Shown here: positions 10,364-64,000 of the stretch, in pieces
Layout of the letters: the number at the start of each line of letters is the position of its first letter
How positions within the stretch are numbered: the first letter of the stretch is position 1
Notes under the pieces: generated by a model
Databases searched by the model: none
The model's input: only the letters and a program-made list of their open reading frames with translations
Told to the model about the DNA's origin: nothing
Made by a program: the position numbers and the translations under genes
Source of the DNA: Scyliorhinus canicula
Taxonomy: Eukaryota
Direction: 5' to 3'
NCBI RefSeq assembly: GCF_902713615.1
Contig: NC_052146.1
Coordinates: 130,737,875-130,801,874 of the forward strand
Length of the DNA: 64,000 nucleotides

Positions 10364-13084
10364 GTGATCTTTACAGCGCCAAGTCTCAATTTACTGACAA
10401 ATGCACAATATTTGAAAAGAACTGTGGTCATAAGTCTATTACCAACCAATGTGATTCACTGCTACAAAACGTTCCAAATATTGTCAAAATTATGTTCACA
10501 AATGGGTGGCGAATGTTACATGCCGTGATTTAAAATTTTGGGAGATTTCTTGGCTCAATGGTAACATTCTTGCCTCAGAAGTTTGTCAGTTCAAGTCCCA
10601 CCAGTGAACTGAGCCTCTCGCCAAAGCTGATACTTCAATCACAGAATTACTGCAGTACAGAAAGAAGCCATTTGGCGCATCGAAGCTGTACTGGCCCTCT
10701 GAAAGAGCACTCTACCTAGGTCCAAGCCCCCACCCTATCCCTGAAACCCTACCTAACCTTTTTGGACTCTCAGCAACAATTTACCATGACCAATCCACCT
10801 CATCTGCACATCTTTGGACTGTGGGAGTGATGCACGATCAATTGCAGAAAGACAAGAGTTGAATACGACTGAGGCTTCATTACACTGAGATGTGTGGCCT
10901 CCTACAGCAGCTGGCGAAATGGCTGCTGTACGGGGCGCACACATATTTATACTCTACCTACTGGGTGGAGCCAGCAGGCAGGGACTACCCCCGTACCTGT
11001 AGTACAGGGTCTTACCACACCCCCCCAATATATACAACAGTGGTGCTTACCACATTCACACCCTGTTAAAATTGAGTCCGGCGGGGGTGGCGGAGAACTA
11101 TATACGGAACAAGTTTTAATATACAGAGGCAAAACATCTTTGGAGTCCAGTACAAGGTGCTTTAACAGTCCCGAACCAATTACAGGTTTAGCCGGTCCAG
11201 GGCCTTGATCTGACTTTGGGAGCGACGCAGTGGTGGCGGCGATTCCGGTGTCGGTCTGGTCCTCGGTGACTCCGGGAGCATGCCGAAATCCTCCTCATCC
11301 TCGGGCGTGGGCAGGGGGAGGATTGATGGTTCTGGGGAGGTTGCTGCTGGGTGCGCCAGGGGAGGGGAAGGTGGCGCCGGGCCAGAGGGGTGTGTGTTTG
11401 GGGAACCTGCTGGTGCCAGGTCCCTGAGGGAGACAGTATCCTGACAGCCATCGGGGTACGCTACGTAGGCATACTGGGGGTTAGCGTGGAGTAACTGCAC
11501 CCTTTCAACCAACGGGTCCGCCTTGTGGAGTCATACGTGCTTACGGAGGAGTACGGGTTCTGGAGCTGCGAGCCAAGTCGGGAGCGACACCCCGGATGTG
11601 GACTTCCTCAGGAAGGCGAATTGACGTTCATGGGGTGTGTTGTTAGTCGCAGTGCATTAGAGCGACCGAATGGAGTGCAGTGCAATGCATTGGGGAGGAC
11701 CTCCTGCCAGCGGGAGGCCGGGAGGTTCCTGGAACGGAGGGCCAGTTGGACGGCCCTCCAGACCATCGCATTCTACCTCTCCACCTGCCCGTTTCCCCGG
11801 GGGTTATAGCTGGTCGTCCTGCTGGAGGCGATACCCCTGCTGAGCAGGAACTGACGCAGCTCATCACTCATGAATGAGGATCCCCTGTCGCTGTGGATGT
11901 AGGCGGGGAAGCCGAACAGAGAGAAGATTGTGTTGATGGCTTTGATGACGGTGGCAGACGTCATGTCGGGGCATGGGATGGCGATGGGGAATCTGGAGTA
12001 CTCATCGACCACACTGAGGAAATACGTGTTACGGTCAGTGGAGGGGAGGGGCCCTTTGGAATCCACACTGAGGTGTTCAAAGGGGCGGGAAGCCTTGACC
12101 AGGCACATGCAGTGAGCTGGTAGAAGTGCAGTTTGCACACCGCACAGACCTGGCAGTCTCTGGTGATTGCCCGTACTTCTTCGATGGAGTAGGGCAGATT
12201 GCAGGCTTTGATGAAGTGGTATAACCGTGTGACTCCTGGGTGACAAAGGTTGTCGTGCAGAATCCAGAGACGGTCCGCCTGTGTGCTGGCACATGTACCT
12301 CGGGATAGGGCATAGGGGGGCTCGTTGAGCTTACCGGGGTGAATCAAAATCTCGTAGTTGTAGGTGGAGAGCTCGATCCTCCACCGCAAGATTTTATTGT
12401 TTTTGATCTTGCCCTGCAGTGTTTGTTTAAACATGAAGGCTACCGACCGTTGGTCAGTGAGGAGAGTAAATTGCCTGCCTCCAATGCCACACAGCTTCAA
12501 CGATGGCCTGGGCCTCTTTTTCGCTGGAGGAGTGTCGAATTTTGAAGGCATGAAGGGTTCGTGAAAAGAATGCCACGGGCGTCCCTGCCTGGTTGAGGGT
12601 GGCGGCTAGGGCAATGTCTGATCCGTCGCTCTCTACTTGAAAGGGTAATGTCTCGTCGACTGCGTGCATCGCGGCCTTGCCGATGTCGGCCCTAATACGG
12701 TTGAAGGCCTGTTGAGCCTTGGCCATCAGGGGGAAAAGAGTGGACTGGATGAGTGGGTGGACCATGTCCACATAGTTTGGGACCCACGGGGCATAGTAAG
12801 AAAAGAACCCCAGAAGGCCTTGGGGAGTGGGGAAGGGGGAGTTCCATGAGGGGGAGCATGCGGTCGGGGTAGGGCCCCAGAACACCGTTCTGGACCACAT
12901 AGCCGAGGATGGCTAAGCGGTTCGTGCTGAATACGCACTTCTCCTTGTTATAGGTGAGGTTTAGGAGAGTGACGGAGTGGAGAAATTTGGCAAGGTTGGC
13001 ATCTTGGTCTTGCTGATCGTGGCCGCAGATGGTGACATTGTCTAGGTGCGGGAAAGTGGCCTGCAGCCCATACCGGTCAACCAT

Positions 13085-13268
13085 GTTTAGCACAGGGCTT
13101 AATCGCTGGCTTTGAAAGCAGACCAAGCAGGCCAGCAGCACGGTTCGATTCCCGTACCAGCCTCCCCGAATAGGCGCCGTAATGTGGCGACTAGGGGCTT
13201 TTCACAGTAACTTCATTTGAAGTCTACTCGTGACAATAAGCGATTTTCATTTAATTTCATTTCATTCA
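13085..13268 (+). mobile_element. tRNA(Lys)-like SINE with Rex1-type tail, inserted in the RT of family B
   Basis: gtttagcacagggc...ggctttgaaagc...ggttcgattccc head; tail ttttcacagtaac...gtgacaataagcga(tttca)n; splits the RT ORF. Confidence 0.8.
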
Positions 13269-15295
13269 GTCCATCTCCCTTTGGAAGTCCGAGACCCCGT
13301 TGGTGACGCTGAATGGAACCCTAAGAAAATGGTAGAGGCGGCCATCTGCCTCGAAGGCAGTGTATGGGCGGTCTGCCTTATGGATGGGGAGCTGGTGGTA
13401 GGCGGATTTTAGGTCTACAGTTGAGAAGACCCGGTACCGTGCAATCTGATTGACCATATCAGATATGCATGGGAGGGGGTACGTGCCGAGCTGCGTGTAC
13501 CAATTGATGGTCTGGCTGTAGTCCACGACCATTCAATGTTTCTCCCCAGTTTTCACCACTACTACTGGGCCCTCCAGGGGCTTTTGCTGGCCTCAGTGAT
13601 GCCTTCCCGAAGCAGCCGCTGGACCTCGGACCTGATGAAGGTCCTGTCCTGGGTGCTGTACCGTCTGCTCCTGGTGGCGACAGGTTTGCAATCCAGGGTA
13701 AGGTTTGCGAATAGGGAAGGTGGGTCGTCCTTTAGTGTCGCGAGGCCGCACGCAGTAAGGGGTAGTAGGGGCCCGCCGAATTTCAATGTTAGGCTCTGGA
13801 TGTTACACTGGAAGTCCAGGTCGAGTAGCAGGGCAGCGCAGAGGTTGGGGAGGACGTAGAGGCGGAAGCCGCTGAATTCTATGCCCTGGATCGTGAGTGT
13901 GGCTATACAGTACCGCCGGATCACCACGGAGTGGGACCCAGAGGCCAAGGAGATTCTCTGATTGGCGGGATGTACCGCGAGGGAGCAGCGCCTTACTGTA
14001 TCGGGATGAGTGAAGCTTTCGGTGCTCCCGGAGTCCAGCAGACAGGATATGTCATGCCCATCGATCTTCACGCTTGTCGAGGTGGTGGCTAGATTGTGCG
14101 GCCGAGACTGGTCAATCGTGACCGAGGTGAGTCGCGGCTGGTCGTCGCTGGTGTCGGACGATGGGGTGCCCGGGAGGCACGGGTCCTGGTACGATGGTGG
14201 CGCCCATGTGCCGTGGGGAGACAAGAGGTGGACAAGATGGCGGCGCCCACGGGCCGCATGTGGCGGGGGTTGAAAGAGATGGCGGCGTCCATGGGCCACA
14301 CTTGGTCTGAGGAGGGGACGATGGTGGCGCCCACTGGCTGCACGTGGTCCGAGGAGGGGAAGATGGCGATGCCCACTGTCAGTACGTGGGGGGGGGGGGG
14401 GGGGGGGGGGGGAGTTCGGGGTGATAGCGGCGACTGAGCGGGTCTGGCACACCGTGGCAAAGTGCCCCTTCTTGCCACAGGCCTTGCAAAGGGCGCTGCG
14501 GGCCGGGCAGCATTGGCAGGGATATTTTTGCTGCCCACAGAAGTAATATCTGGGGCCCCCAGGGTTGGCTGGCTAGCGCGTGGCACAGGTGTATGATTGG
14601 CTGAGTGGGGTCCCCGGTGGGGCGGCCGTATGCGGAGTCCACGATGTGTAGGAGGAGTGGGCCGCGTGGCTGGGGGTGTAGGCCTGGATATTGCACGAGG
14701 CGAGTGTCATCGATAGCGCCAGCTTTTTGGTTTCCGTGAGGTCGAGCGTGGCCTCCTCTAAAAGTTGCTGGCAGATGTGGTTGACCCTATCCCCGTGACG
14801 AAAGCGTCCCGCATGAGGGGGTTCGAATGTTCCGTGGCCGTGACGGCCTGACAGTCACAGTCTCTGACCAGGGGAATTAAAGATCGCCAGAAATCTACGG
14901 ACTGACCAGCGAGCTGACTACGAGTAGAAAGTATGTATCTGGCGAAGAGCGTGTTCGTCCGCTGGGCGTAGTTCCCTTTCAGTAGCGCCATGGCTTCATC
15001 GTAGGTTGGCGCGTCCTGGATAAGCGGAAAAACTTTGGATCTCAGCCGCGAGTAGAGGATCTGGATCTTCTGAGCTTCCGGAATTGGGTCTGGTGCAGAC
15101 CTGATGTAAGCTTCGAAACAAGCTAGCCAATGTTCAAAGTCCTTTTTGGCATTGCTTGATTGCGGATCCAGCTGCAGGCGATCCGTCTTGATGCGGAGGT
15201 CTGTCTTCTGAAAACTTTAGTGGAATAAATTGATGCACGATCAATTACACAAAGACGAGAGTTGAATACAACTGAGGCTTTATTACACTAAGATG

Positions 15296-15514
15296 AAAAT
15301 GAAAAAATGAAAAATGAAAATCGCTTATTGTCACGAGTAGGCTTCAATGAAGTTACTGTGAAAAGCCCCTAGTCGCCACATTATGGCGCTTGTCCGGGGA
15401 GGCTGGTACGGGAATCAAACCGTGCTGCTGGCCTGCTTGGTCTGCTTTAAAAGCCAGCGATTTAGCTGAGTGAGCTAAACCAGCCCCTAGTGAGCTAAAC
15501 CGGCTCCTGTGGTT
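15296..15514 (-). mobile_element. Same tRNA(Lys)-like SINE, inserted in the 5' LTR of family B
   Basis: Reverse complement of the 13085-13268 family; absent from the partner LTR. Confidence 0.85.
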
Positions 15515-17499
15515 TGTGTGGCCTCCTACAGCAGCTGGCGAAATGGCTGCTATACGGGGAGCACACATATCTATACTCCACCTACTGGGCGGAGCCAGCA
15601 GGCAGGGACTACCCCCGTACCTGTAGTACTGGACCTTACCACACCTCTCCTAATATATACAACAGTGGTGTTTACCACAGGGAGGAAACTGGAGCACCCG
15701 GAGGAAACACACACAGGCACGAGTGTGAAAGTGCAAATTCCACACAGACAGTCACCCAAGGCCAGAATTGAAATGGGTCCCCGGTGCTGTGAGACAACAG
15801 TAATCACCATGTTAGCACTGTGTTGCCCATAATATTTATCTGATATTAATATTTATCCTTCTAACAACATCACTAAAGCAGATTATCTTGTTAATATCTC
15901 GTTATTTTTGGGAGTTTGCTGTGTATAAATGAAATGCAATGTAACAGTGGCTACATTTAAAAAGCATTTTGTTGGCTATAAAGCAACTTGCTAATCTCTG
16001 AGGCTATGAATGGTGCTATGTTAATGCAATGCATTCTTCTTTCACCAGTTTACAATGTCATCAGTATTAGTTGAATTTCTGCTTTTTAATCCATTTCCTG
16101 TCCAGTTCGATATTCTCTAACTTTCTCTCAACAATTAATAATTGCTTCAGGGTTTCGCTGGCAGATGTTCCTTATGCTCAGGTTAAAATATGGCTTCCAA
16201 CATGTTACTACTATTTCTAGACCCCATAAAAATGAAAGTGCCATGATGTTTTTTTTTCAGGGCATTGTGAGAGGACTAAATCCTATGCAGTTCTGTAGGG
16301 TAGAATTAAGGGCCCGCAGAAACCTCTCCAAGATCAATGCATGGACAGCTTTGATCTCAGAACGTGCTCCTTTTGATTCCAGCTCTCAAAGTGTCTGCCT
16401 TGTCTCCTGAGAGTTCTGGAATCAAGCCTTTTCTTTAATCTCCCCATCATTAGTGCTGCTTACACAGGAAGTTGACACTTCCCAAAGACCTCTGGGACTT
16501 TTGCTCTCGGGCTGAATTCTAAGGTTTGCACATCCACTGAAATTTCTTAACCATTTTCTACTTTCTCTTGCTGTTATATAAAAACATCCCGCACCCTGTG
16601 TCCTAGAACCAATTCCATTTTAACCTAAACATCTTTTATATTTAAATAGTATTTGCTAACCAATGCTTCGTTTTGCTCTCTTGCACTTAACAATTTGTAA
16701 TATATTAATGGAATCAAATATATTGCTTCTGAGGAAAGAAATAGGAATGAAATGAAAGGCATTTAGATTCTGTACATCAGTGGGAATCTCATATGGCTTT
16801 TATTGATGTATTTATTTATTCATGTTTTCCCTTTGTTTTTCAGTCCTGCTGCTCTGCGTGGAGTGGAGGAATAAAGTGAATGACAAATTCTGTGGCATTT
16901 TTTAAGCGCTGGTTGAAATAAACAGGTTCGCAACTTCATTTAAAATAAATGTCTAGGCATTTTACAAAAATGCATTAAGAGCTTTGCTAAAATTAGCGCT
17001 GAGGCATATTAGTCACCAGAGAGGCTAGTGGACTCCCTGGTGGTGGGAGGATATCTGCAAGTTACAACGTGATATTGTGAATAAAAATACATCCAAACTC
17101 TTTTTTTTAAGCTATCTTTCAAAATCTGCCAGGAATTAAAACTGTAACAGTGACAGACACAAAAAAGCCAATCAGTTATAAAGAGCTTGCATCGAAATTG
17201 GAAGGTAGTCAAACCATCAGTAATTGCCAACCCTTATCAAGGCACTAAGTGTTGTCAATGATCAAGAACCCTCAAAAATCAATCAGCGGTGCTCTGGGGG
17301 AATAAAGGATACTCCACAGTACGGAAGTTGTAATGAAGGTTATTGAAAACCAAGGAAAAGCCTTGGGGGACAAAAAGGAACAGTTTCTGTAGGGAAAACT
17401 AAGTTGCCTTATCACATTGGAAAGAACTGCACACCGATTGGTCAACAGATCAGTGAGGATAATACATCTGAGCTCTCTTGGGCCTAGCACTGCATTTAT

Positions 17500-22476: not shown

Positions 22477-23287
22477 TTAGTGAGCTTCCATACCGTGGCT
22501 GTGTACATTGCTGGATGGCCGCGGAGTGGGAGAACTTGGTGTCAACTGGTATGGCACTCTCTATGACATATGGGCGTTACAGGGGCTGGGGTGCAACATC
22601 ATCCCTGGGAATTATGTTTTGGTTTAATTAGTTATGCTTCCTGTCACATTTTTGTTTTGCTTAAAATGCCCCACCAGAGGCTCTCACCCCCTCTTATTCA
22701 GAGATTTTTGTTTAATTTATTGATTTTTGTTTTCCTTAAAACGCATAATGTGCTTCCATTACGAATTTTCCAGAAACATTTCTTGTCAGATAGGGTTATC
22801 TTTGTGTGGTTGGATATAAACAAGCACAAGGAAGATATAAATGAAAACTGGACCTTGAATGTGGTTCTTTTGAACATATTTCCATGAAAGCTAGTATAGA
22901 TCATTTGAAATTCCAATGGTTGCAAGGCAGAGCTGATAATTCATGTGATGCACTATTCTGAATCAAAAAAATCCGATGGTTTGCTTGGTGTCTTTTGATC
23001 TTTAAAAGATAGACCTTTGCAGGCTTACACTTAAAAAGGCCCATTGTTGTTTGTTGACAAGCCAGTTAACCAGTTGAGTGTTTATTGTTTCATATGACCA
23101 TATTTTAATTTGATTAGACTGACAAGGTGTAATCATATAATTGTAATGGGGAACAGCACTGTTGAGCGTCAGATGAAATTCATACTGCAAATGCTCTCAA
23201 CTCTTCTTCAAAGAATTGTTTTCGCTTCTCTTCTACTTCCCTGTTTACTTCTTTCCAAAATGACCTCACCGAACCATAAATGTCTCA

Positions 23288-23395
23288 AATGAAATGAAAA
23301 TCGCTTATTGTCACGAGTAGGCTTCAATGAAATTACTGTGAAAAGCCCCTAGTCGCCACATTCCGGCGCCTGTCCGGGGAGGCTGGAACGGGAAT
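23288..23395 (-). mobile_element. 5'-truncated SINE with Rex1-type tail
   Basis: aatgaaatgaaaatcgcttattgtcacgagtaggcttcaatgaa matches the 15296 copy. Confidence 0.8.
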
Positions 23396-28848: not shown

Positions 28849-29180
28849 ATAGGTTGAGAGCTGAGAGGAGGACGAACTGCTTCTGCAGAGGCTGGTGAAT
28901 TTCTGGAACGTGCTGTCCTATAGTGCGGTGGGGTCTGATTCATTGAATGGTTTCAAGAAAGAGATCGATAGATCTCTGATAAAAAAAACAGGTTAAAGGA
29001 ATGTGGGGAACAGGCAGGGAAGTGGATTTGAGAGTCATGATCTGATTGAATAGGGGAGCAGGTCCGAAGAGCTGAATTGTCTGCTTCTGCTCCTGATTCC
29101 TGGACCCTGGGAATCTCGGAGGGTCAGAGAGACCTTGGTGTGCATGTTTATTGATTCTTTAAGGTAGCAGGACAGGTGGA

Positions 29181-29423
29181 TGTGGTGAGATAACCACTGT
29201 AGTTATGTGTACTGCAGTAGGGGGATGTATGCCTGTACCTGTAATACAGGTTCCTCCGGTCAGCCCCTGCTGGCTAGCTCCGCCCACAGGGAGCTTATGT
29301 ATAAATGTATGAGAGCTGCTCAGACCCTCAGTCTACTGTTGCGGATGGAGGGACAACATCGTACAGCAATAAAGCCTCTATTGTACTAGTCTCTCGGCTT
29401 TGAGTATAATTGTTAGCGCCACA
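29181..29423 (+). repeat. 5' LTR of family A (GC box, TATA-like TATAAA near 29300, AATAAA at 29368)
   Basis: Direct repeat of 33550-33792. Confidence 0.97.
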
Positions 29424-29440
29424 ATTTATTGCTGTACGAT
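29424..29440 (+). promoter_or_regulatory. Non-tRNA primer-binding-site position, complementary to LTR 29358-29373
   Basis: TTTATTGCTGTACGAT is the exact reverse complement of ATCGTACAGCAATAAA. Confidence 0.8.
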
Positions 29441-29452
29441 TTCCCAGTCACC

Positions 29453-32400
29453 ATGGACATCAGAGTCAAGCCTGACCGTCTGCAGCTGGATCCACATTCG
29501 CCTCACGCCAGAAAAGACTTTGATCACTGGCTCGCAGTCTTCGAGGCCTACATCTCTTCAGCAGACCCTCCCCCGACGGAGGCTCAGAAAAAGCAACTCC
29601 TGTACTCCAGACTTAGCTCCAGCGTCTTTCCACTCATTCGAGATGCGACAGACTACACCGCAGCTATGGAACTGCTCAAGGAGAACTATGCACCATCGGC
29701 GAACACCCTGTTTGCGAGGCATCAACTTTCTACTCGCGTCCAGCAGCCGGGTGAGTCGATTGAGGACTTCTGGAGGGCCCTTATACCTCTGGTACGAGAC
29801 TGCGACTGCCGGGCCATCACAGCCACGGAACATTCTGATTTACTCATGCGCGATGCCTTCGTTACAGGCATTGCATCGGACCCCATCCGGCAACGACTGC
29901 TGGAAGGGGTTGCCCCCGACCTCGCGGCCGCAAAGGCCCTGGCGCTCTCCATGACGGCCGCCTCCCGTAGTGCGCACACTTACTCCGCTAGCCACTCGGC
30001 CCACCCGTCCTACCCCTCGTGGACCCCGCAAACGGCTCCCCAGGCCCATCCGTCCCACCCATCGTGGACCCCGCAAACGGCCCCCCCAGCAGCCGCCCCC
30101 GCGCACTATGCCTGCGCTGCCCGCCGCACCGCACCCCCTGGGGGTCCCCACTGTTACTTCTGCGGCCAACAGAAGCACCCTCGCCAACGCTGCCCGGCCC
30201 GCACAGCGACCTGCAAAGCTTGTGGCAAGAAAGGCCACTTTGCAGCGGTGTGTCAGTCCCGGACGGTCGCCGCTATCGCGCCGCCGGTCCCCACGCCTCA
30301 GCCGCTCCCTCAATGGGCCCCGCCGTCCGCTTCCCCCGACCCCACGTGCAATCAGTGGGCGCCGCCATCTTTTGCCGGCCCGCCACGTGCGCCCCATGGG
30401 CGCCGCCATCTTCATCCACCACAGCCATGTGCGTTTTATGGGCGCCGCCATTTTGTTCCGACCCCATAACGTGCGCTCCATGGACGCTGCCATTTTACCC
30501 ACAGGTACTGCGGATGCCGCCATCTCGTCTCCAGGGGCCGCCATCACGGGACACGGGTCGCTACCGCTCCTCGTCGGACTCATCTGACTCAACCGCCGAC
30601 CAACCACTGCTCGCCTCCGTTACGCTCGACCAGTCCCGTCCTCGCAACCTGGCACCCTCTTCCACATAGGTGCTGGTCAACGGCCATGTGACCTCCTGCC
30701 TCATCGACTCCGGGAGCACCGAGAGCTTCGTCCACCTGGACACGGTAAGGCGCTATTCCCTTGCGATCCATCCCGCCGACCGGCAGATCTCCCTTGCCTC
30801 CGGTTCCCACTCTGTCCCGATCCGGGATTTCTGCCTGGTTAAACTCACTGTACAGGGTGTGGAATTCGACCGTTTCCGTCTGTACATTCTCCCCGACCTC
30901 TGCACTTCACTCCTACTAGGCCTGGATTTCCAGTGCAATCTCCAGAGCCTCACCCTCAAATTCGGTGGACCCCTACCTCCCCTCACCGTTTGCGGCCTCG
31001 CGACCCTCAAGGTCGAGCCCCCCTCCCTCTTTGCCAATCTGACTGTGGATTGCAAGCCCGTTGCCACCAGGAGCAGACGGTACAGCACCCAGGACAAGGC
31101 CTTCATCAGGTCCGAAGTCCAGCGGCTGCTTCGGGAGGGTATCATCGAGGCCAGCAACAGCCCTTGGAGAGCCCAGGTGGTAGTGGTTAAGACCGGGGAG
31201 AAGCACAGGATGGTCGTGGACTACAGCCAGACCATCAACCGGTACACGCAGCTCGATGCGTACCCCCTCCCCCGCATTTCTGATATGGTCAATCAGATTG
31301 CACAGTACTGGGTCTTCTCTACTATTGACCTGAAATCCGCCTACCACCAGCTCCCCATCCGTAAATCGGACCGTCCCTACACTGCCTTTGAGGCGGACGG
31401 TCGTCTGTACCAATTTCTGAGGGTTCCCTTCGGCGTCACGAATGGGGATTGGTCTTTCAGCGAGAAATGGACCGAATGGTTGACCGGTACGAATTGCAGG
31501 CCACCTTCCCGTACCTCGACAATGTCACCATCTGCGGCCATGACCAGCAGGACCATGATGCCAACCTTTATAAATTCCTCCACACCGCATCTCTCCTTAA
31601 TCTCACGTACAACAAGGAGAAATGCGTGTTCCGCACAGACCGCTTAGCCATCCTCGGCTACGTAGTCCAAAACGGACTACTGGGGCCCGATCCCGACCGC
31701 ATGCTCCCCCTCATGGAGCTCCCAATTCCCCACTGCCCCAAGGCCCTCAAACGCTGCCTTGGGTTTTTCTCTTATTACGCCCAGTGGGTCCCGCAATACG
31801 CAGACAAGGCCCGGCCACTTATCCAGTCCACACATTTTCCCCTCTCGGCCGAGGCACAACAGGCCTTCGCCTGCATTCGATCTGACATAGCCAGGGCGGG
31901 GATGCACGCCGTAGACGAGACTCTGCCTTTCCAAGTAGAGAGCGACGCTTCAGATGTCGCCCTTGCCGCCACGCTGAATCAGGCCGGCAGACCCGTGGCA
32001 TTCTTTTCACGCACCCTCCACGCCTCCGAAATTCGGCATTCCTCTGTCGAAAAGGAAGCCCAGGCAATCGTTGAAGCGGTGCGGCACTGGAGGCATTACC
32101 TGGCCGGCAGGAGATTCACTCTCCTCACTGACCAACGGTCGGTAGCCTTCATGTTCAACAACACGCAGCGGGGCAAGATCAAGAATGACAAAATCTTGCG
32201 GTGGAGAATCGAGCTCTCCACCTTTAACTACGAGATCTTGTATCACCCCGGCAAGCTCAACGAGCCCCCAGACGCCCTCTCCCGAGGTACATGTGCCAGT
32301 GCACAAGTGAACCAGCTCCGTGCCTTGCACGACAGCCTTTGCCATCCGGGGGTCACCCGCTTGTACCATCTGATCAAAGCCCGCAATCTGCCCTACTCCG

Positions 32401-33437
32401 TCGAGGAAGTACGGACAGTCACCAGAGACTGCCAGATCTGTGCGGAGTGCAAGCCGCACTTCTACCTGCCAGATCGCGCGCGCCTGGTGAAAGTATCCCG
32501 CCCCTTTGAACGCCTCAGCGTGGACTTCAAAGGGCCCCTTCCCTCTACCGACCGCACCACCTACATCCTTAGTGTGGTCGATGAATTTTCTAGGTTCCCC
32601 TTTGCCATCCCATGCCCAGATATGACGTCTGCCACCGTCATCAAGGCCCTGGATTCCATTTTCGCCCTGTTCGGTTTCCCCGACTATATCCACAGTGACA
32701 GGGGATCCTCATTCATGAGCGATGAGCTGCGTCAGTTCCTGCTCAGCAGGGGTATCGCCTCCAGCAGGACGACCAGCTACAACCCCCGGGGAAACGGGCA
32801 GGTAGAGAGGGAGAACGGGACGGTATGGAGGGCCGTCCAGCTGGCCCTACGGTCCAGGAACCTCCCAGCCGCTCGCTGGCAGCAGGTCCTCCCTGACGCG
32901 CTCCATTCCATTCGGTCGCTACTGTGCACCGCAACTAACAGTACACCCCATGAACGTGTTTTTGCCTTCCCTAGGAAGTCCACATCCGGAGTGTCGCTCC
33001 CGACTTGGCTCACGACTCCGGGCCCAGTCCTTCTCCGTAGGCATGTACAGCACCACAAGGCGGATCCCCTGGTGGACAAAGTACGCCTTCTCCACGCCAA
33101 CCCTCAGTATGCCTACGTGGAGTTCCCCGACGGCCGCCAGGACACAGTCTCGCTCCTGGACCTGGCTCCCTCAGGTGCCGATCCCATGCCCACACCCCTT
33201 CCTGCGCCAACCCCAGCGCCCCCCTATTCGTCCCCATCAGGTCCATCCCTCATCCCCCTGCCCACCCTGGAGGACATGGAAGATTTCGGCTTGCTCTCGG
33301 AGTCATCCCGCCAGCAGCCAGCACCAACACCGCCAGCACCTGCACCATCGGGGCCATCACCGCCTGTGCCGACGTCACCACCACAGCTACGCCGCTCACA
33401 GCGGAACGTCCGACCACCGATTCGGCTCAACCTGTAA
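29453..33437 (+). pseudogene. gag-pol polyprotein with 3 lesions (frameshift ~30375, stop 30667-30669, frameshift ~31448)
   Basis: Two CX2CX4HX4C knuckles (CYFCGQQKHPRQRC, CKACGKKGHFAAVC), protease LIDSGS, RT IDLKSAYHQ..VPFG..YLDN, RNase H SDAS/EKEA/TDQ/DALSR, integrase HHCC and VDFKGP/HSDRG/GQVER; no chromodomain. Confidence 0.95.
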
Positions 33438-33549: not shown

Positions 33550-33792
33550 TGTGGTGAGATAACCACTGTAGTTATGTGTACTGCAGTAGGGGGATGTATG
33601 CCTGTACCTGTAATACAGGTTCCTCCGGTCAGCCCCTGCCGGCTAGCTCCGCCCACAGGGAGCTTATGTATAAATGTATGAGAGCTGCTCAGACCCTCAG
33701 TCTACAGTTGCGGATGGAGGGACAACATCGTACAGCAATAAAGCCTCTATTGTACTAGTCTCTCGGCTTTGAGTATAATTGTTAGCGCCACA
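33550..33792 (+). repeat. 3' LTR of family A
   Basis: Direct repeat of 29181-29423. Confidence 0.97.
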
Positions 33793-34051
33793 GTGGATAA
33801 AGTGGTTAAGAAGGCATACTTTATTAGGCAAGGCATTGAATTTAAGAGCAAGGCATTGAATTTAAGAGCAGGGATGTTATGCTGGAGCTGTATAAAATGT
33901 TGGTCTGGCCATAGCTATGATATTTTCTGCAGTTCTGGAATCTACATTATAGGAGGGATGTGATAGCGCTGGAAAGGTAGCAGATGAGATTTTCCAGGAT
34001 GTTGCCTGGGCTGGAGAATTTTAGTTATGAAGTGAGATTGGATAGACTGGG

Positions 34052-36250: not shown

Positions 36251-36560
36251 GGCACGGTGGCACAATGGTTAACACTACTGCCTCACAGCACCAGGGGCCC
36301 AGGTTCAATTCCAACCTCGGTTGATTATCTGTGTGGAGTTTGCACTTCCTCCCCGTGCCTGCGTGGGTTTCCTCCAGGTGCTGCGGTTTCCTCCCACAGT
36401 CCAAAGATGTGCAGGCTAGATGGATTGGCCATGAAAAATTGTCCCTTAGCATCCAAAGGGTTAGGAGGGGCGATGGGATAGGGTGGGCTGTGGGATGATA
36501 TTTCCAAGGGTAAGTGCAGATTTGATGGGCCAATTGGCCTCCTTCTGAACTGTAGGGATC
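36251..36560 (+). mobile_element. HE1-type SINE
   Basis: ggcacggtggcacaatggttaacac head, V core, CR1-type tail. Confidence 0.85.
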
Positions 36561-52119: not shown

Positions 52120-54480
52120 CTGGGAGGGGTGGGGGGTCCCTGGGAGGGGTGGGGGGTCACAGGGAGGGGGTGGGAGGCGATTAGAGGGGAGGGGGTTGTC
52201 GGGGGGGAGGGGCTGGTTGGAGGGGGGGGTGTCAGGGAGGGAGGGGCTGGTTGGAGGGGGGTGTGTCAGGGAGGGAGGGGCTGGTTGGAGGGGGGTGTCA
52301 GGGAGGGAGGGGCTGGTTGGGGGGGGTGTCAGGGAGGGAGGGGCTGGTTGGAGGGGGGGTGTCAGGGAGGGGGCTGGTTGGAGGGGGGTGTCAAGGAGGG
52401 AGGGGCTGGTTGGAGGGGGGTGTCAGGGAGGGAGGGGCTGGTTGGAGGGGGGTGTCAGGGAGGGAGGGGCTGGTTGGAGGGGGGTGTCAGGGAGGGAGGG
52501 GCTGGTTGGAGGGGGGGTGTCAGGGAGGGAGGGGCTGGTTGGAGGGGGGGGGGTGTCAGGGAGGGAGGGGCTGGTTGGAGGGGGGTGTCAAGGAGGGAGG
52601 GGCTGGTTGGAGGGGGGTGTCAGGGAGGGAGGGGCTGGTTGGAGGGGGGTGTCAGGGAGGGAGGGGCTGGTTGGAGGGGGGGTGTCAGGGAGGGGAGGGG
52701 CTGGTTGGAGGGGGGGTGTCAGGAGGGAGGGGCTGTTGGAGGGGGGGTGTCGGTAGGAGGGGCTGGTTGGAGGGAGGGGCTGGTTGGAGGGGGGGGTCAG
52801 GGAGGGAGGGGCTGGTTGGAGGGGGGGGTGTCAGGGAGGGGCTGGTTGGAGGGGGGTGTCAGGGAGGGGTGGGTGGAGGGGGGGTCAGGAGGGAGGGGCT
52901 GGTTGGAGGGTGTCAGGGAGGGAGGGGCTGGTTGGAGGGGGGTGTCAGGGAGGGGGAGGGGCTGGTTGGAGGGGGGTGTCAGGGAGGGAGGGGCTAGTTG
53001 GAGGGGGGGGGTGTCAGGGAGGGAGGGGCTGGTTGGAGGGGGGTGTCAGGAGGAGGGGCTGGTTGGAGGGGGGGTCAGGGAGGAGGGCTGGTTGGAGGGT
53101 GGTGTCGGGAGGGGGGCTGGTTGGAGGGGGGTGTCAGGGAGGAGGGGCTGGTTGAGGGGGGGTGTCAGGAGGGAGGGCTAGTTGGAGGGGGGGGTGTCAG
53201 GGAGGGAGGGCTGGTTGGAGGGGGTTCAGGAGGAGGGCTGGTTGGAGGGGGGAGTCAGGGAGGGAGGGCTGGTTGGAGGGGGAGTCAGGGAGGGGAGGCT
53301 GGTTGGAGGGTGGGTCAGGAGGGAGGGGCTGGTTGGAGGGGGGTTTCGGAGGGAGGGGCTGGTTGGAGGGGGGTGTCGGAGGGAGGGGCTGATTGGAGGG
53401 GGGTGTCGGAGGGAGGGGCTGGTTGGAGGGGGGTGTCAGGGAGGGAGGGAGGGGCTGGTTGGAGGGGGGGTGTCGGGGAGGGAGGGGCTGGTTGGAGGGG
53501 GGTGTCGGGGAGGGAGGGGCTGGTTGGAGCGGGGTGTCGGGGAGGGAGGTTCTGGTTGGAGGAGGTGTGTCACAGGGAGGGGGGACTGGTTGGAGGAGGG
53601 GGTGTCACAGGGAGGGGGGAGGGGCCGGGTGGGTGTCGGAGGGAGGGGCTGGTTGGAGGAGGGCATGCCACAGGGAGGGGTGGGCTGGTTGGAGGAAGGG
53701 GTGTCAGAGGGAGGGGGGAGGGGCTGGGTGGGTGTCAGGGAGGGAGGGGTTGGAGGAGGGGGTGTCAGAGGGGGGGAGGGGCTGGGTGGGTGTCAGGGAG
53801 GGAGGGGCTGGTTGGAGGAGGGGATGCCACAGGGAGGGTGGGCTGGTTGGAGGAGGGGGTGTCACAGGCAGGGAGAGGCTGGGGGTGTCAGGGAGGGAGG
53901 GTCTGGTTGGAGGTGGGTTTGTCATGGAGTGAGGGCTGGTTGGAGGAGGGGGTGTCACAGGGTGGCAGTGGCTGGTTGGAGGAGGGGGGTGTCATGGTGG
54001 GAGGGGCTGGTTGGAAGACGGGGGTGTCACAGGGAGGGGCTGGTTGGAGGAGGGGGTGCCACAGGGAGCGGCAGATACAGAGGGTGTCACAGGAAGAGAG
54101 GGAGGGTTTGATTGGTGGAGGGGAGTGGTTAGAGGGTGTCACAGCGAAGTATGAGCTGGTTGGAGGAGGGGGTTTCTGAGAGAGGGGGTGCCACAGGGAG
54201 GGAGGGGCTGATTGGAGGAGGGGGGTGTTACAGGAAGGGGCTGGTTGGAGGAGGGGATGCCATAGGGAGGGAGGGGCTGATTGGAGGAGGGGGTGTCACA
54301 GGAAGTGGTGGTTGGAGGGGCTGGGTGTTTGAAGGAAGAGGTGCCACAGTGAGGAGGGGGTGTTGAAAGTAATGTCACAGATGGGCGGGGGCTGGAAAGG
54401 GTGTCACGAGGGAGGGGGTGGTTTGGATGGGGTATCACGCGGGAGGGTGTGAAGAGGGAGGTAGGGTGTCATGGTGGGGA
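52120..54480 (+). repeat. G-rich minisatellite, ~30-33-bp unit gggagggaggggctggttggaggggggtgtca
   Basis: Dozens of visible tandem units, homogeneous at 52200-53000 and progressively degenerate to the right. Confidence 0.97.
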
Positions 54481-62357: not shown

Positions 62358-64000
62358 TGATGCACAATCAATGATGACTAAAGCGAGGTTGTAGTACAAC
62401 TGAAGGCTTTAATAAGCTAGATGTTTCCCCCAGCAGCTTGGGTACAGAAAGGAAGCTGCTGGGGTGGCACGGGCTCTTATACCCCACCTTGCAGGGCGGA
62501 GCTACCATATAGGCTCGACCAATAGAAAACATCCATTATCTACCAATGGTGTTCCAGCATTACTAGGTACCGTAATAGCTCTACACAGACTACCACATTC
62601 ACCCCCTGTTTTTACAAAAGTCTGGTGGGGGCGGTGGCTTCATATTACAACATGGTAACGTGGTAGATGTTATGATTATGGAGGTACCGTAATGCCTCCG
62701 TACAGCGTTTTACCTTATTATTGTAACTATTTGCAATTTTATAATTAACTATATACATGTTGAAATGAAGCAATCAGTCGATCGGGGGCCCTGGTCATCC
62801 TCTGTGATCGTCGAAGCATCGGTGGTGACGCCGATGGAGGTTTGGGCGTCTGTGACTCCGGGAGCATGGTTTCGATCTCTGTGGCAGCTTCAACACCCCT
62901 AGACGGCGCTGGTGGGTAAGCTGATTGATCTGGGAAGGGAGCGTCTGGGGGGTGCGTCAATGGGCGGGGGCGGGGGGGGGGGGGGGGGGGGGTGCCTAGA
63001 CAGGGCCATATCGGCGAAGAACTGATCCTCCTGGGAAGGGGGCAGCTGTAAGGTGCACCGGTGGGGTGGGACTGGTGGCGGGGGTTTGCGCGGGGATCTG
63101 TAGGTCTCGTAGGGAGACCGTGTCTTGACGGCCATTGGGGTTTGCCACGTAGGCGTACTGGGGGTTAGCGTGGAGAAGATGGACCCTCTCGACCAACGGG
63201 TCCGACTTGTGCGCCCGCACGTGTTTTCGGAGCAGGATGGGTCCGGGGGCTGCCTGCCAGGTTGGGAGCGAGGTCTTCCTGGGGAAAACAAGGAGACGTT
63301 CGTGAGGTGTTTGGTTGGTCGTGGTGCAGAGCAGGGACGTGGTGCAGAGCAGGGACGTGGTGCAGAGCAGGGACCGGATGGAGTGGACAGCATCCGGGAG
63401 GCGGACTTGAGGTCCACCGTGGAGAAGACCTTGTATTGCGTGATCCTGTTTACCAGGTCAGATATGCGGGGGAGAGGGTACGCGTCCAGCTGCGTAAACC
63501 TGTTGATGGTCCGACTGTAGCATCCTATTCTTCTCCCCGGTCTTTACCACCACTACTTGAGCTCTCCAGGGACTGTTGCTAGCTTCAATGACTCCTTCCC
63601 TCAGTAGCCGTTGGACCTCTGACCTAATAAAGATCCAGTCCTGGACACTGTACCGTCTGCTCCTGGTGGCGATGGGTTTGCAATCCACGGTGAGGTTTGC
63701 AAACAGGGAAGGTGGATCGACCTTGATGGTCGCGAGGCTGCAGACAGTGACTGGGTATAGGGCTGCCGAATTTGAAAGTTAGACTTTGGAGGTTGCACTG
63801 GAAGTCTAACCCTAGGAGTGTGGCTGCGCAGAGGTGGGGAAGGACGTAGAGCCAGTAATTTTTGAACTCCCTTCCCTGGACAATGAGATTTGCTACACAG
63901 AACCCCTTTATCTATCTCTACTGAGTGGGAACCAGAGGTCAGGGAGATTTTTTGATTAACGGGGTGGATGGGGAGAGAACAGCGCCTTACCGTGTCGGGG
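62358..64000 (-). mobile_element. Internally deleted Gypsy (Mag-like) element, family E; 3' LTR 62358-62597, continues past the window end
   Basis: LTR TG...CA plus PPT; integrase C-terminus LHANPQYAYV..QDTVSLRDL; RT N-terminus STVDLKSA fused directly to the integrase end; protease remnant. Confidence 0.9.

What the first reader, a model, noticed from the sequence alone, without database searches (positions are those of the whole stretch)
31512..31523. Reverse transcriptase with a natural YLDN active site instead of YxDD
Seen: the motif is TAC CTC GAC AAT (YLDN) in family A, CAC CTA GAC AAT (HLDN, 13037-13048, -) in family B and TAC TTG GAC AAT (YLDN, 45713-45724, -) in family D. The Leu codon differs among the three while Asn is fixed, so Asn is ancestral to the lineage and not copy decay. 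Family A has LTRs differing at only 2 of 243 sites, so the lineage transposed recently. Established: the second Asp of YxDD is nearly invariant; D-to-N cripples HIV-1 RT, while Ty1/Ty3 RT keep some polymerase activity with altered metal use. Inference: this is a working two-aspartate RT, possibly co-adapted with the unusual priming structure.
Basis: partly seen in the sequence, partly recalled or inferred. Interest (0 to 1): 0.75.

Follow-up and report, generated by a model that had tools for sequence, protein, structure and literature searches.

The report
Gypsy reverse transcriptase with natural YLDN
Three decayed Gypsy-type retrotransposons in this shark-like genome carry YLDN instead of the textbook YxDD in their reverse transcriptase, and this is the normal, selected state of a large animal-wide group of such elements rather than damage, so the third "catalytic" aspartate is naturally dispensable there.

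Summary
YLDN (31512-31523, +), HLDN (13037-13048, -) and YLDN (45713-45724, -) sit in frame in RT motif C of three Ty3/Gypsy-order LTR elements. The Asn aligns with Ty3 RT Asp214.

All window copies are broken. Copy A has a frame break between motif A and motif C.

The Asn is not decay:
- 92 of 109 relatives found from this query are YxDN, including all 15 rows of the shark/ray clade.
- The Asn codon varies synonymously (AAT/AAC).
- dN/dS is 0.05-0.19.

The lineage is not uniformly Asn. A search from a YLDD member returned 102 Asp against 10 Asn, mostly from arthropods. A joint tree needs at least 10-11 Asp/Asn switches, and its root is unresolved.

The self-complementary primer site occurs in 4 of 4 assessable Asp-type and 3 of 3 Asn-type elements. 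Co-adaptation with priming is therefore not supported.

Natural YVDN is already published for nematode BEL/Pao elements. The scan reached the same reading on other DNA of this genome (s1-240131). RT activity is inferred, not assayed.

The parts
29176..29180 (+). Target-site duplication GTGGA, left copy (right copy at 33793-33797)
   Evidence: Read.
29181..29423 (+). 5' LTR of element A (243 bp, TG...CA)
   Evidence: 2 of 243 differences from the 3' LTR.
29358..29373 (+). LTR segment ending in AATAAA that is the exact complement of the primer-site position
   Evidence: read directly. The same layout is seen in L002, L004, L007, L010, L011 and L012.
29425..29440 (+). Self-complementary primer-binding-site position (16 nt), one base after the LTR
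   Evidence: exact reverse complement of 29358-29373.
29453..30469 (+). gag ORF with two CCHC knuckles (30152-30193, 30212-30253)
30670..30945 (+). Aspartic protease (LIDSGST at 30700-30720)
   Evidence: Pfam.
31189..31664 (+). Reverse transcriptase domain of copy A, split by a frame break between about 31431 and 31452
   Evidence: Pfam RVT_1 on two pieces in different frames; tblastn frames.
31327..31329 (+). Motif A catalytic Asp codon (in TIDLKSAYHQ)
   Evidence: It aligns with Ty3 D151.
31512..31523 (+). Motif C YLDN (TAC CTC GAC AAT); the Asn takes the place of Ty3 D214
31848..32225 (+). RNase H domain
   Evidence: Pfam RT_RNaseH.
32316..32786 (+). Integrase zinc-binding and catalytic core domains
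   Evidence: Pfam Integrase_H2C2 and rve; motifs.
33550..33792 (+). 3' LTR of element A, preceded by a purine-rich tract
13037..13048 (-). Motif C HLDN of copy B. The element spans about 10891-15679, with LTRs 92.7% identical.
45713..45724 (-). Motif C YLDN of copy D. The element spans about 44025-48570, with LTRs 93.8% identical.
63059..63999 (-). Fourth, fragmentary copy of the same lineage, lacking the motif C region
   Evidence: tblastn.

Best explanation
The window holds four decayed members of a Ty3/Gypsy-order LTR retrotransposon lineage. Its features are short LTRs, one gag-pol reading frame, two CCHC knuckles and a self-complementary primer site.

In the branch that includes all sampled shark and ray elements, the normal reverse transcriptase motif C is YxDN. 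The enzyme most likely works as an ordinary two-metal polymerase. The metals would be held by the motif A Asp and the first Asp of motif C. The third position would have a supporting role, in primer-end or pyrophosphate handling, that Asn can fill in this protein background.

Shown: the motif, its homology to Ty3 D214, its conservation with synonymous codon change, purifying selection on pol, and an intact, just-inserted YLDN element in a stingray.

Inferred: that the Asn enzyme polymerises and supports transposition by itself.

Across the wider lineage the position has switched between Asp and Asn at least 10 times. Both states occur in elements with identical LTRs, so both are viable.
For: - The motif is in frame in three copies with different Leu codons.
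- The Asn aligns with the second Asp of YLDD in Ty3 RT 4OL8, E=2e-32, and the motif A Asp is kept.
- Among relatives of the window protein, 92 are YxDN and 17 YxDD; no other residue occurs at that position. The 15-row shark/ray clade is all Asn.
- L004 (Hypanus sabinus chromosome) has 100% identical LTRs, a target duplication and a 1327-aa gag-pol ORF without stops. It has two CCHC knuckles, DTGS, TIDLKSAYHQ, YLDN, HHCC and a core integrase motif.
- The Asn codon is AAT in the window copies and AAC in L004, L001 and L007. pN is 0.12-0.26 against pS 0.61-0.76, giving dN/dS 0.05-0.19.
- Published enzymology shows the third carboxylate is not needed for chemistry in LTR-retrotransposon RTs: Ty3 D214N/E and Ty1 D211N.
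- Asp-type relatives L002, L011 and L012 are equally young and intact. A joint tree of 222 rows needs 11 changes.
Against: - No enzyme or transposition assay exists for any member.
- In Ty3 and Ty1 the same substitution abolishes transposition in vivo. Ty1 D211N lowers kpol 223-fold.
- Every copy in this window is broken, so the window itself shows no working gene.
- Some single-row switches on the tree could be G/A mutations in dead copies.
- No second site co-varying with the switch was found over 7 independent contrasts, so no compensating residue can be named.
- The tree could not be rooted, so the direction of the changes is unknown.
Confidence: 0.8

Rival explanations
1. The YLDN elements are polymerase-dead passengers copied in trans by YLDD-bearing autonomous relatives.
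For: D-to-N at this position kills Ty1 and Ty3 transposition. Asp-type relatives exist in the wider lineage. The window's own copies are all defective.
Against: All 15 rows of the shark/ray clade are Asn, including near-identical recently amplified stingray proteins. The intact young stingray element is YLDN. RT-RH-IN of Asn lineages is under strong purifying selection and the Asn codon changes synonymously, which is not expected for an unused enzyme. The Asp-type elements are only about 55% identical to the shark ones.
Confidence: 0.07
2. The Asn is adaptive and tied to the lineage's tRNA-free self-priming. In a broader form, Asp/Asn switching tunes metal preference, processivity or fidelity under selection.
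For: Both unusual traits occur in the same lineage. Ty1 D211N shifts preference to Mn2+ and alters pyrophosphate handling. Only Asp or Asn is ever seen at the position.
Against: The self-complementary primer site is present in 4 of 4 assessable Asp-type elements and 3 of 3 Asn-type ones, so the two traits are not associated within the lineage. No other column tracks the switch.
Confidence: 0.1
3. The Asn is neutral decay of dead copies, or an assembly error.
For: GAY to AAY is a single transition. Copy B shows such decay at the neighbouring Tyr codon.
Against: The same residue appears in three independently decayed copies with different Leu codons. It also appears in about 100 proteins from sharks, rays, cnidarians, molluscs and other animals and in an intact element.
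Confidence: 0.02

Closest known systems
Nematode BEL/Pao elements with YVDN (C. elegans Cer7-Cer12; Ancylostoma Atlas virus)
   Same: They show a natural, lineage-wide Asp-to-Asn change at the second Asp of YxDD in an LTR-retroelement RT, found in intact elements with identical LTRs (papers read).
   Different: They belong to a different superfamily. The window RT's best solved relative is Ty3 RT, and its polyprotein carries RT_RNaseH and rve with no BEL/Pao family hit. Here the motif is mostly YLDN, the hosts range from cnidarians to sharks, and the position toggles repeatedly with Asp.
Engineered Ty3 RT D214N/E and Ty1 RT D211N
   Same: The same residue is changed. The mutant enzymes still polymerise in vitro, which shows that two carboxylates suffice for chemistry.
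   Different: The yeast mutants cannot transpose. Ty1 recovers 5-10% through RNase H suppressors. The natural lineage here has amplified recently with Asn, and no compensating site was found.
Mag / SURL lineage of Ty3/Gypsy elements (a lead from the literature, not tested)
   Same: Shared features are short LTRs, a compact element of about 4.3-4.8 kb, a Gag with two CCHC arrays, and hosts across metazoans including vertebrates.
   Different: No reference Mag or SURL sequence was available to place on the tree. The LTR 5' ends (TGTGGTG) fit the CsRN1 pattern of one LTR survey better than its Mag patterns. Whether published Mag/SURL alignments already show YxDN could not be checked.
Tf1/sushi-type self-priming retrotransposons
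   Same: There is no tRNA primer site. The bases after the 5' LTR pair with the element's own RNA.
   Different: This is only context for this finding. Here the pairing partner ends at the LTR's AATAAA segment, and the trait is independent of Asn or Asp.

Membership tests
Ty3/Gypsy (Metaviridae) LTR retrotransposon | Paired LTRs with TG...CA ends and a short target duplication | tested here: met
   LTRs at 29181-29423 and 33550-33792, with target duplication GTGGA.
Ty3/Gypsy (Metaviridae) LTR retrotransposon | pol domain order protease - RT - RNase H - integrase | tested here: met
   Pfam hits in that order along 30670-33437.
Ty3/Gypsy (Metaviridae) LTR retrotransposon | RT closest to Ty3-type RTs | tested here: met
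   The best PDB matches are Ty3 RT 4OL8 and 7Q5B, E about 1e-32.
Ty3/Gypsy (Metaviridae) LTR retrotransposon | tRNA-complementary primer binding site | tested here: not met
   The 16 nt after the LTR are the exact complement of LTR 29358-29373. The same holds in six relatives.
Canonical RT catalytic triad D...YxDD | Motif A Asp | tested here: met
   TIDLKSAYHQ at 31321-31350 aligns with Ty3 D151.
Canonical RT catalytic triad D...YxDD | First Asp of motif C | tested here: met
   GAC at 31518-31520 aligns with Ty3 D213.
Canonical RT catalytic triad D...YxDD | Second Asp of motif C | tested here: not met
   AAT (Asn) at 31521-31523. Asn is also found in 92 of 109 relatives.
BEL/Pao YVDN elements of nematodes | BEL/Pao-type polyprotein | tested here: not met
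   No BEL/Pao Pfam family was hit. The hits are gag-asp_proteas, RVT_1, RT_RNaseH and rve, and the nearest solved structure is Ty3.
Mag/SURL lineage of Ty3/Gypsy | Gag with two CCHC arrays and a compact element with short LTRs | tested here: met
   Two CCHC knuckles in copy A and in L004. LTRs are 132-329 bp and elements are about 4.0-4.6 kb. The feature is as described in the paper read.
Mag/SURL lineage of Ty3/Gypsy | Phylogenetic placement with reference Mag, SURL or Jule pol sequences | not testable with these tools
   No reference sequence of these elements could be fetched, and none of the 234 hits carries such a name.

The most novel reading that the evidence does not exclude
Asn-type reverse transcriptases of this lineage are fully transposition-competent on their own. 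The repeated Asp/Asn switching is not neutral but tunes the enzyme, for example its metal preference, pyrophosphate release or processivity, to host conditions. This would be a natural counter-example to the yeast result that the third carboxylate is indispensable in vivo.
Probability: 0.15. Interest if true: 0.7.

Novelty: new variant of a known kind. Interest (0 to 1): 0.45.

Why it matters
The YxDD box is used as the hallmark of a live reverse transcriptase, both in annotation pipelines and in textbooks. In Ty1 and Ty3 the D-to-N change blocks transposition.

This lineage has Asn as a normal state and both states occur in freshly inserted intact elements. That shows the third carboxylate can be dispensed with in vivo in the right background. 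It also offers matched natural Asn/Asp enzyme pairs for asking what that residue really does.

In practice, YxDN copies of this lineage should not be scored as dead on the motif alone. The advance is modest, because natural YVDN was already described in nematode BEL/Pao elements.

Tried and rejected
- **Literature.** Full-text searches for YLDN, YVDN, YXDN, YIDN and YMDN with retrotransposon or reverse transcriptase terms found only the nematode BEL/Pao reports. No Gypsy report turned up, but older subscription papers on Mag, SURL and Jule are not held. One guessed PMC id and one DOI were not held.
- **Naming the clade.** No named reference was available. The LTR-end patterns in one survey were ambiguous.
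- **Rooting the tree.** I used a distant Gypsy-like RT that happened to lie in L006. It attached by a 2.7-long branch to single long rows, and the key split had support 3, so polarity is left open.
- **Compensating residue.** The best columns moved with the switch in only 4-5 of 7 contrasts (p about 0.06-0.13 before any correction), so none is claimed.
- **Primer-site layout.** It could not be assessed in L001 (tandem arrangement), L003, L005, L006, L008 (no LTR pair or rearranged) or L009 (a single collapsed LTR with an uncertain end).
- **Insertion in copy B.** ARAGORN and Rfam found nothing.
- **Steps not run.** The large representative-protein search and structure prediction were not run. 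The family was not open and the residue equivalence was already given by the Ty3 alignment.
- **Handling of broken copies.** They were read piece by piece.

Full report
**Observation.**
- TAC CTC GAC AAT at 31512-31523 (+);
- CAC CTA GAC AAT at 13037-13048 (-);
- TAC TTG GAC AAT at 45713-45724 (-).

Each lies in the context ATFP[Y/H]LDNV[T/A]ICGHDQQDH. The window has no N. Its G+C content is 50% and its CpG observed/expected ratio is 0.5. Its closest proteins are from catsharks and a stingray. Nothing in it or in the fetched loci was taken for human.

**Anatomy of element A.**
- The LTRs are 29181-29423 and 33550-33792. Each is 243 bp with TG...CA ends, and they differ at 2 sites, 29271 and 29337. 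They are flanked by the duplication GTGGA.
- Between them lies a gag ORF with two CCHC knuckles. It is followed by protease, RT, RNase H and integrase in Ty3/Gypsy order.
- The 16 nt at 29425-29440 are the exact complement of LTR 29358-29373, which ends in AATAAA.
- The copy is not intact. tblastn with an intact relative needs three frames, with breaks near 30376 and between about 31431 and 31452. Motif A (Asp codon 31327-31329) and motif C are therefore in different frames.

**The other copies.**
- Copy B (about 10891-15679, LTRs 92.7% identical) has at least five frame breaks and a ~175-bp insertion right upstream of the motif. Its His is decay of the Tyr.
- Copy D (about 44025-48570, LTRs 93.8% identical) keeps a 365-codon stop-free RT fragment with an internal in-frame deletion.
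- A fourth fragment at 63059-63999 lacks the motif region.

**Which residue is it?** phmmer of an intact relative's RT against all PDB sequences gives Ty3 RT (4OL8, 7Q5B) as the best match, E about 1e-32. The Asn aligns with the second Asp of Ty3 YLDD (D214). The motif A Asp and the first motif C Asp are kept.

**Is the Asn decay?** No.
- Of 109 relatives with a readable motif found from the window protein, 92 are YxDN and 17 YxDD. No other residue occurs at that position.
- Named sources include sharks and rays, cnidarians, molluscs, a rotifer and others.
- On a maximum-likelihood tree, the 15-row clade that holds the window copies and all named shark and ray proteins is entirely Asn.
- The Asn codon is AAT in the window copies but AAC in three fetched relatives.
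- Between families, synonymous sites are near saturation (pS 0.61-0.76) while pN is 0.12-0.26. That gives dN/dS of 0.05-0.19 for RT-RH-IN.

The element fetched from a Hypanus sabinus chromosome (L004) shows the opposite:
- 100% identical LTRs and a 5-bp target duplication;
- one uninterrupted 1327-aa gag-pol ORF;
- two CCHC knuckles, DTGS, TIDLKSAYHQ, an HHCC zinc motif and an integrase core motif;
- YLDN at motif C.

Several stingray proteins of this family are nearly identical to one another and all are Asn, which points to a recent burst.

**The lineage is not uniformly Asn.**
- The first search was biased towards the query's own kind, so I searched again from a YLDD member (P0097). That returned 114 new proteins: 102 Asp and 10 Asn.
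- The named Asp-type hits are largely from insects and spiders, with a whipworm.
- All share the clade's TxCG signature after the motif.
- A joint tree of 222 rows, with the motif masked, separates an Asn-majority assemblage from an Asp-majority one. It needs 11 changes of state; an RT-only tree of 176 rows needs 10.
- Several switches involve multi-member groups. Some single-row ones could be mutations in dead copies.
- Rooting with a distant Gypsy-like RT found by chance in L006 failed through long-branch attraction. I cannot say whether Asn or Asp is ancestral within the sampled set.
- Asp-type elements are also young and intact. L011 (Pieris brassicae) and L012 (Ischnura elegans) have 100% identical LTRs and ORFs of 1216 and 1210 aa. 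L002 has 99.7% identical LTRs.

**Link to priming.** The self-complementary primer site, which pairs with the LTR's poly(A)-signal segment, was found in both kinds of element.
- Asn-type: window A (16 nt), L004 (16 nt) and L007 (12 nt).
- Asp-type: L002 (16 nt), L010 (11 nt), L011 (13 nt) and L012 (16 nt).

That is every element in which it could be assessed. The layout is a trait of the whole lineage and is not associated with Asn. No other alignment column follows the Asp/Asn switch over 7 independent contrasts.

**Mechanism.**
- Established: in Ty3 RT, D151 and D213 are required, while D214N and D214E keep polymerase activity with reduced processivity. All these changes are lethal for transposition (review read).
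- Established: in Ty1 RT, D211N keeps polymerase activity with kpol down 223-fold and a preference for Mn2+. It has a pyrophosphorolysis defect and blocks transposition, and RNase H suppressors restore 5-10%. Retroviral RTs are inactivated by mutating either Asp.
- Inferred: the Asn-type RT is a working two-metal polymerase that uses the motif A Asp and the first motif C Asp. This protein background tolerates either Asn or Asp at the third position.

**What is known.**
- A natural YVDN is published for nematode BEL/Pao elements: Cer7-12 as cited in the Sinbad paper, and Atlas virus. The Sinbad paper noted that activity remained to be tested.
- I found no report for a Ty3/Gypsy lineage in the held library. 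The older Mag, SURL and Jule papers are not held.
- The two CCHC arrays, short LTRs and host range fit the Mag/SURL lineage as described in two papers, but membership could not be tested.
- Earlier notes of this scan had already reported YLDN in many windows of this genome. One follow-up (s1-240131) reached the same reading. My tests agree with it. They add the Asp-rich arthropod assemblage, the intact stingray element and four Asp-type primer-site cases.

**Verdict.** The co-adaptation idea is not supported. This is a new variant of a known kind, of moderate interest. The direct residue test on an element was referred.

Noticed in passing
window 29358-29373 and 29425-29440: The primer-site position of element A is an exact 16-nt complement of the LTR segment ending at AATAAA. 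There is no tRNA-type site. The same layout appears in six fetched relatives of both motif types.
   Followed up: partly
window 13088-13262: A ~175-bp insertion interrupts the RT of copy B just upstream of motif C. ARAGORN and Rfam find nothing in it. It may be a short interspersed repeat.
   Followed up: partly
window 52188-54055: A G-rich minisatellite with a 32-nt unit repeated about 58 times at about 80% match, with related short arrays up to 54318.
   Followed up: partly
L001 1-7628: On this metagenome contig, pol-bearing units of the shark-type element lie head to tail, about 3.76 kb apart and 98.5% identical. The record name ends in '_c'. It may be a tandem array, a circular form or an assembly artefact.
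   Followed up: no
L006 1306-3456: A different Gypsy-like RT with HMDD at motif C lies directly upstream of the YLDD element. Tyr is replaced by His in a 717-aa open frame.
   Followed up: no
window 36252-36449 / 43883-44079 and 15305-15415 / 23287-23395: Further dispersed repeat pairs, 82% and 94% identical, not assigned to any element.
   Followed up: no
L003 632-663 and 729-760: A perfect inverted repeat of about 32 nt lies upstream of a decayed YLDD element. Its meaning is unknown.
   Followed up: no
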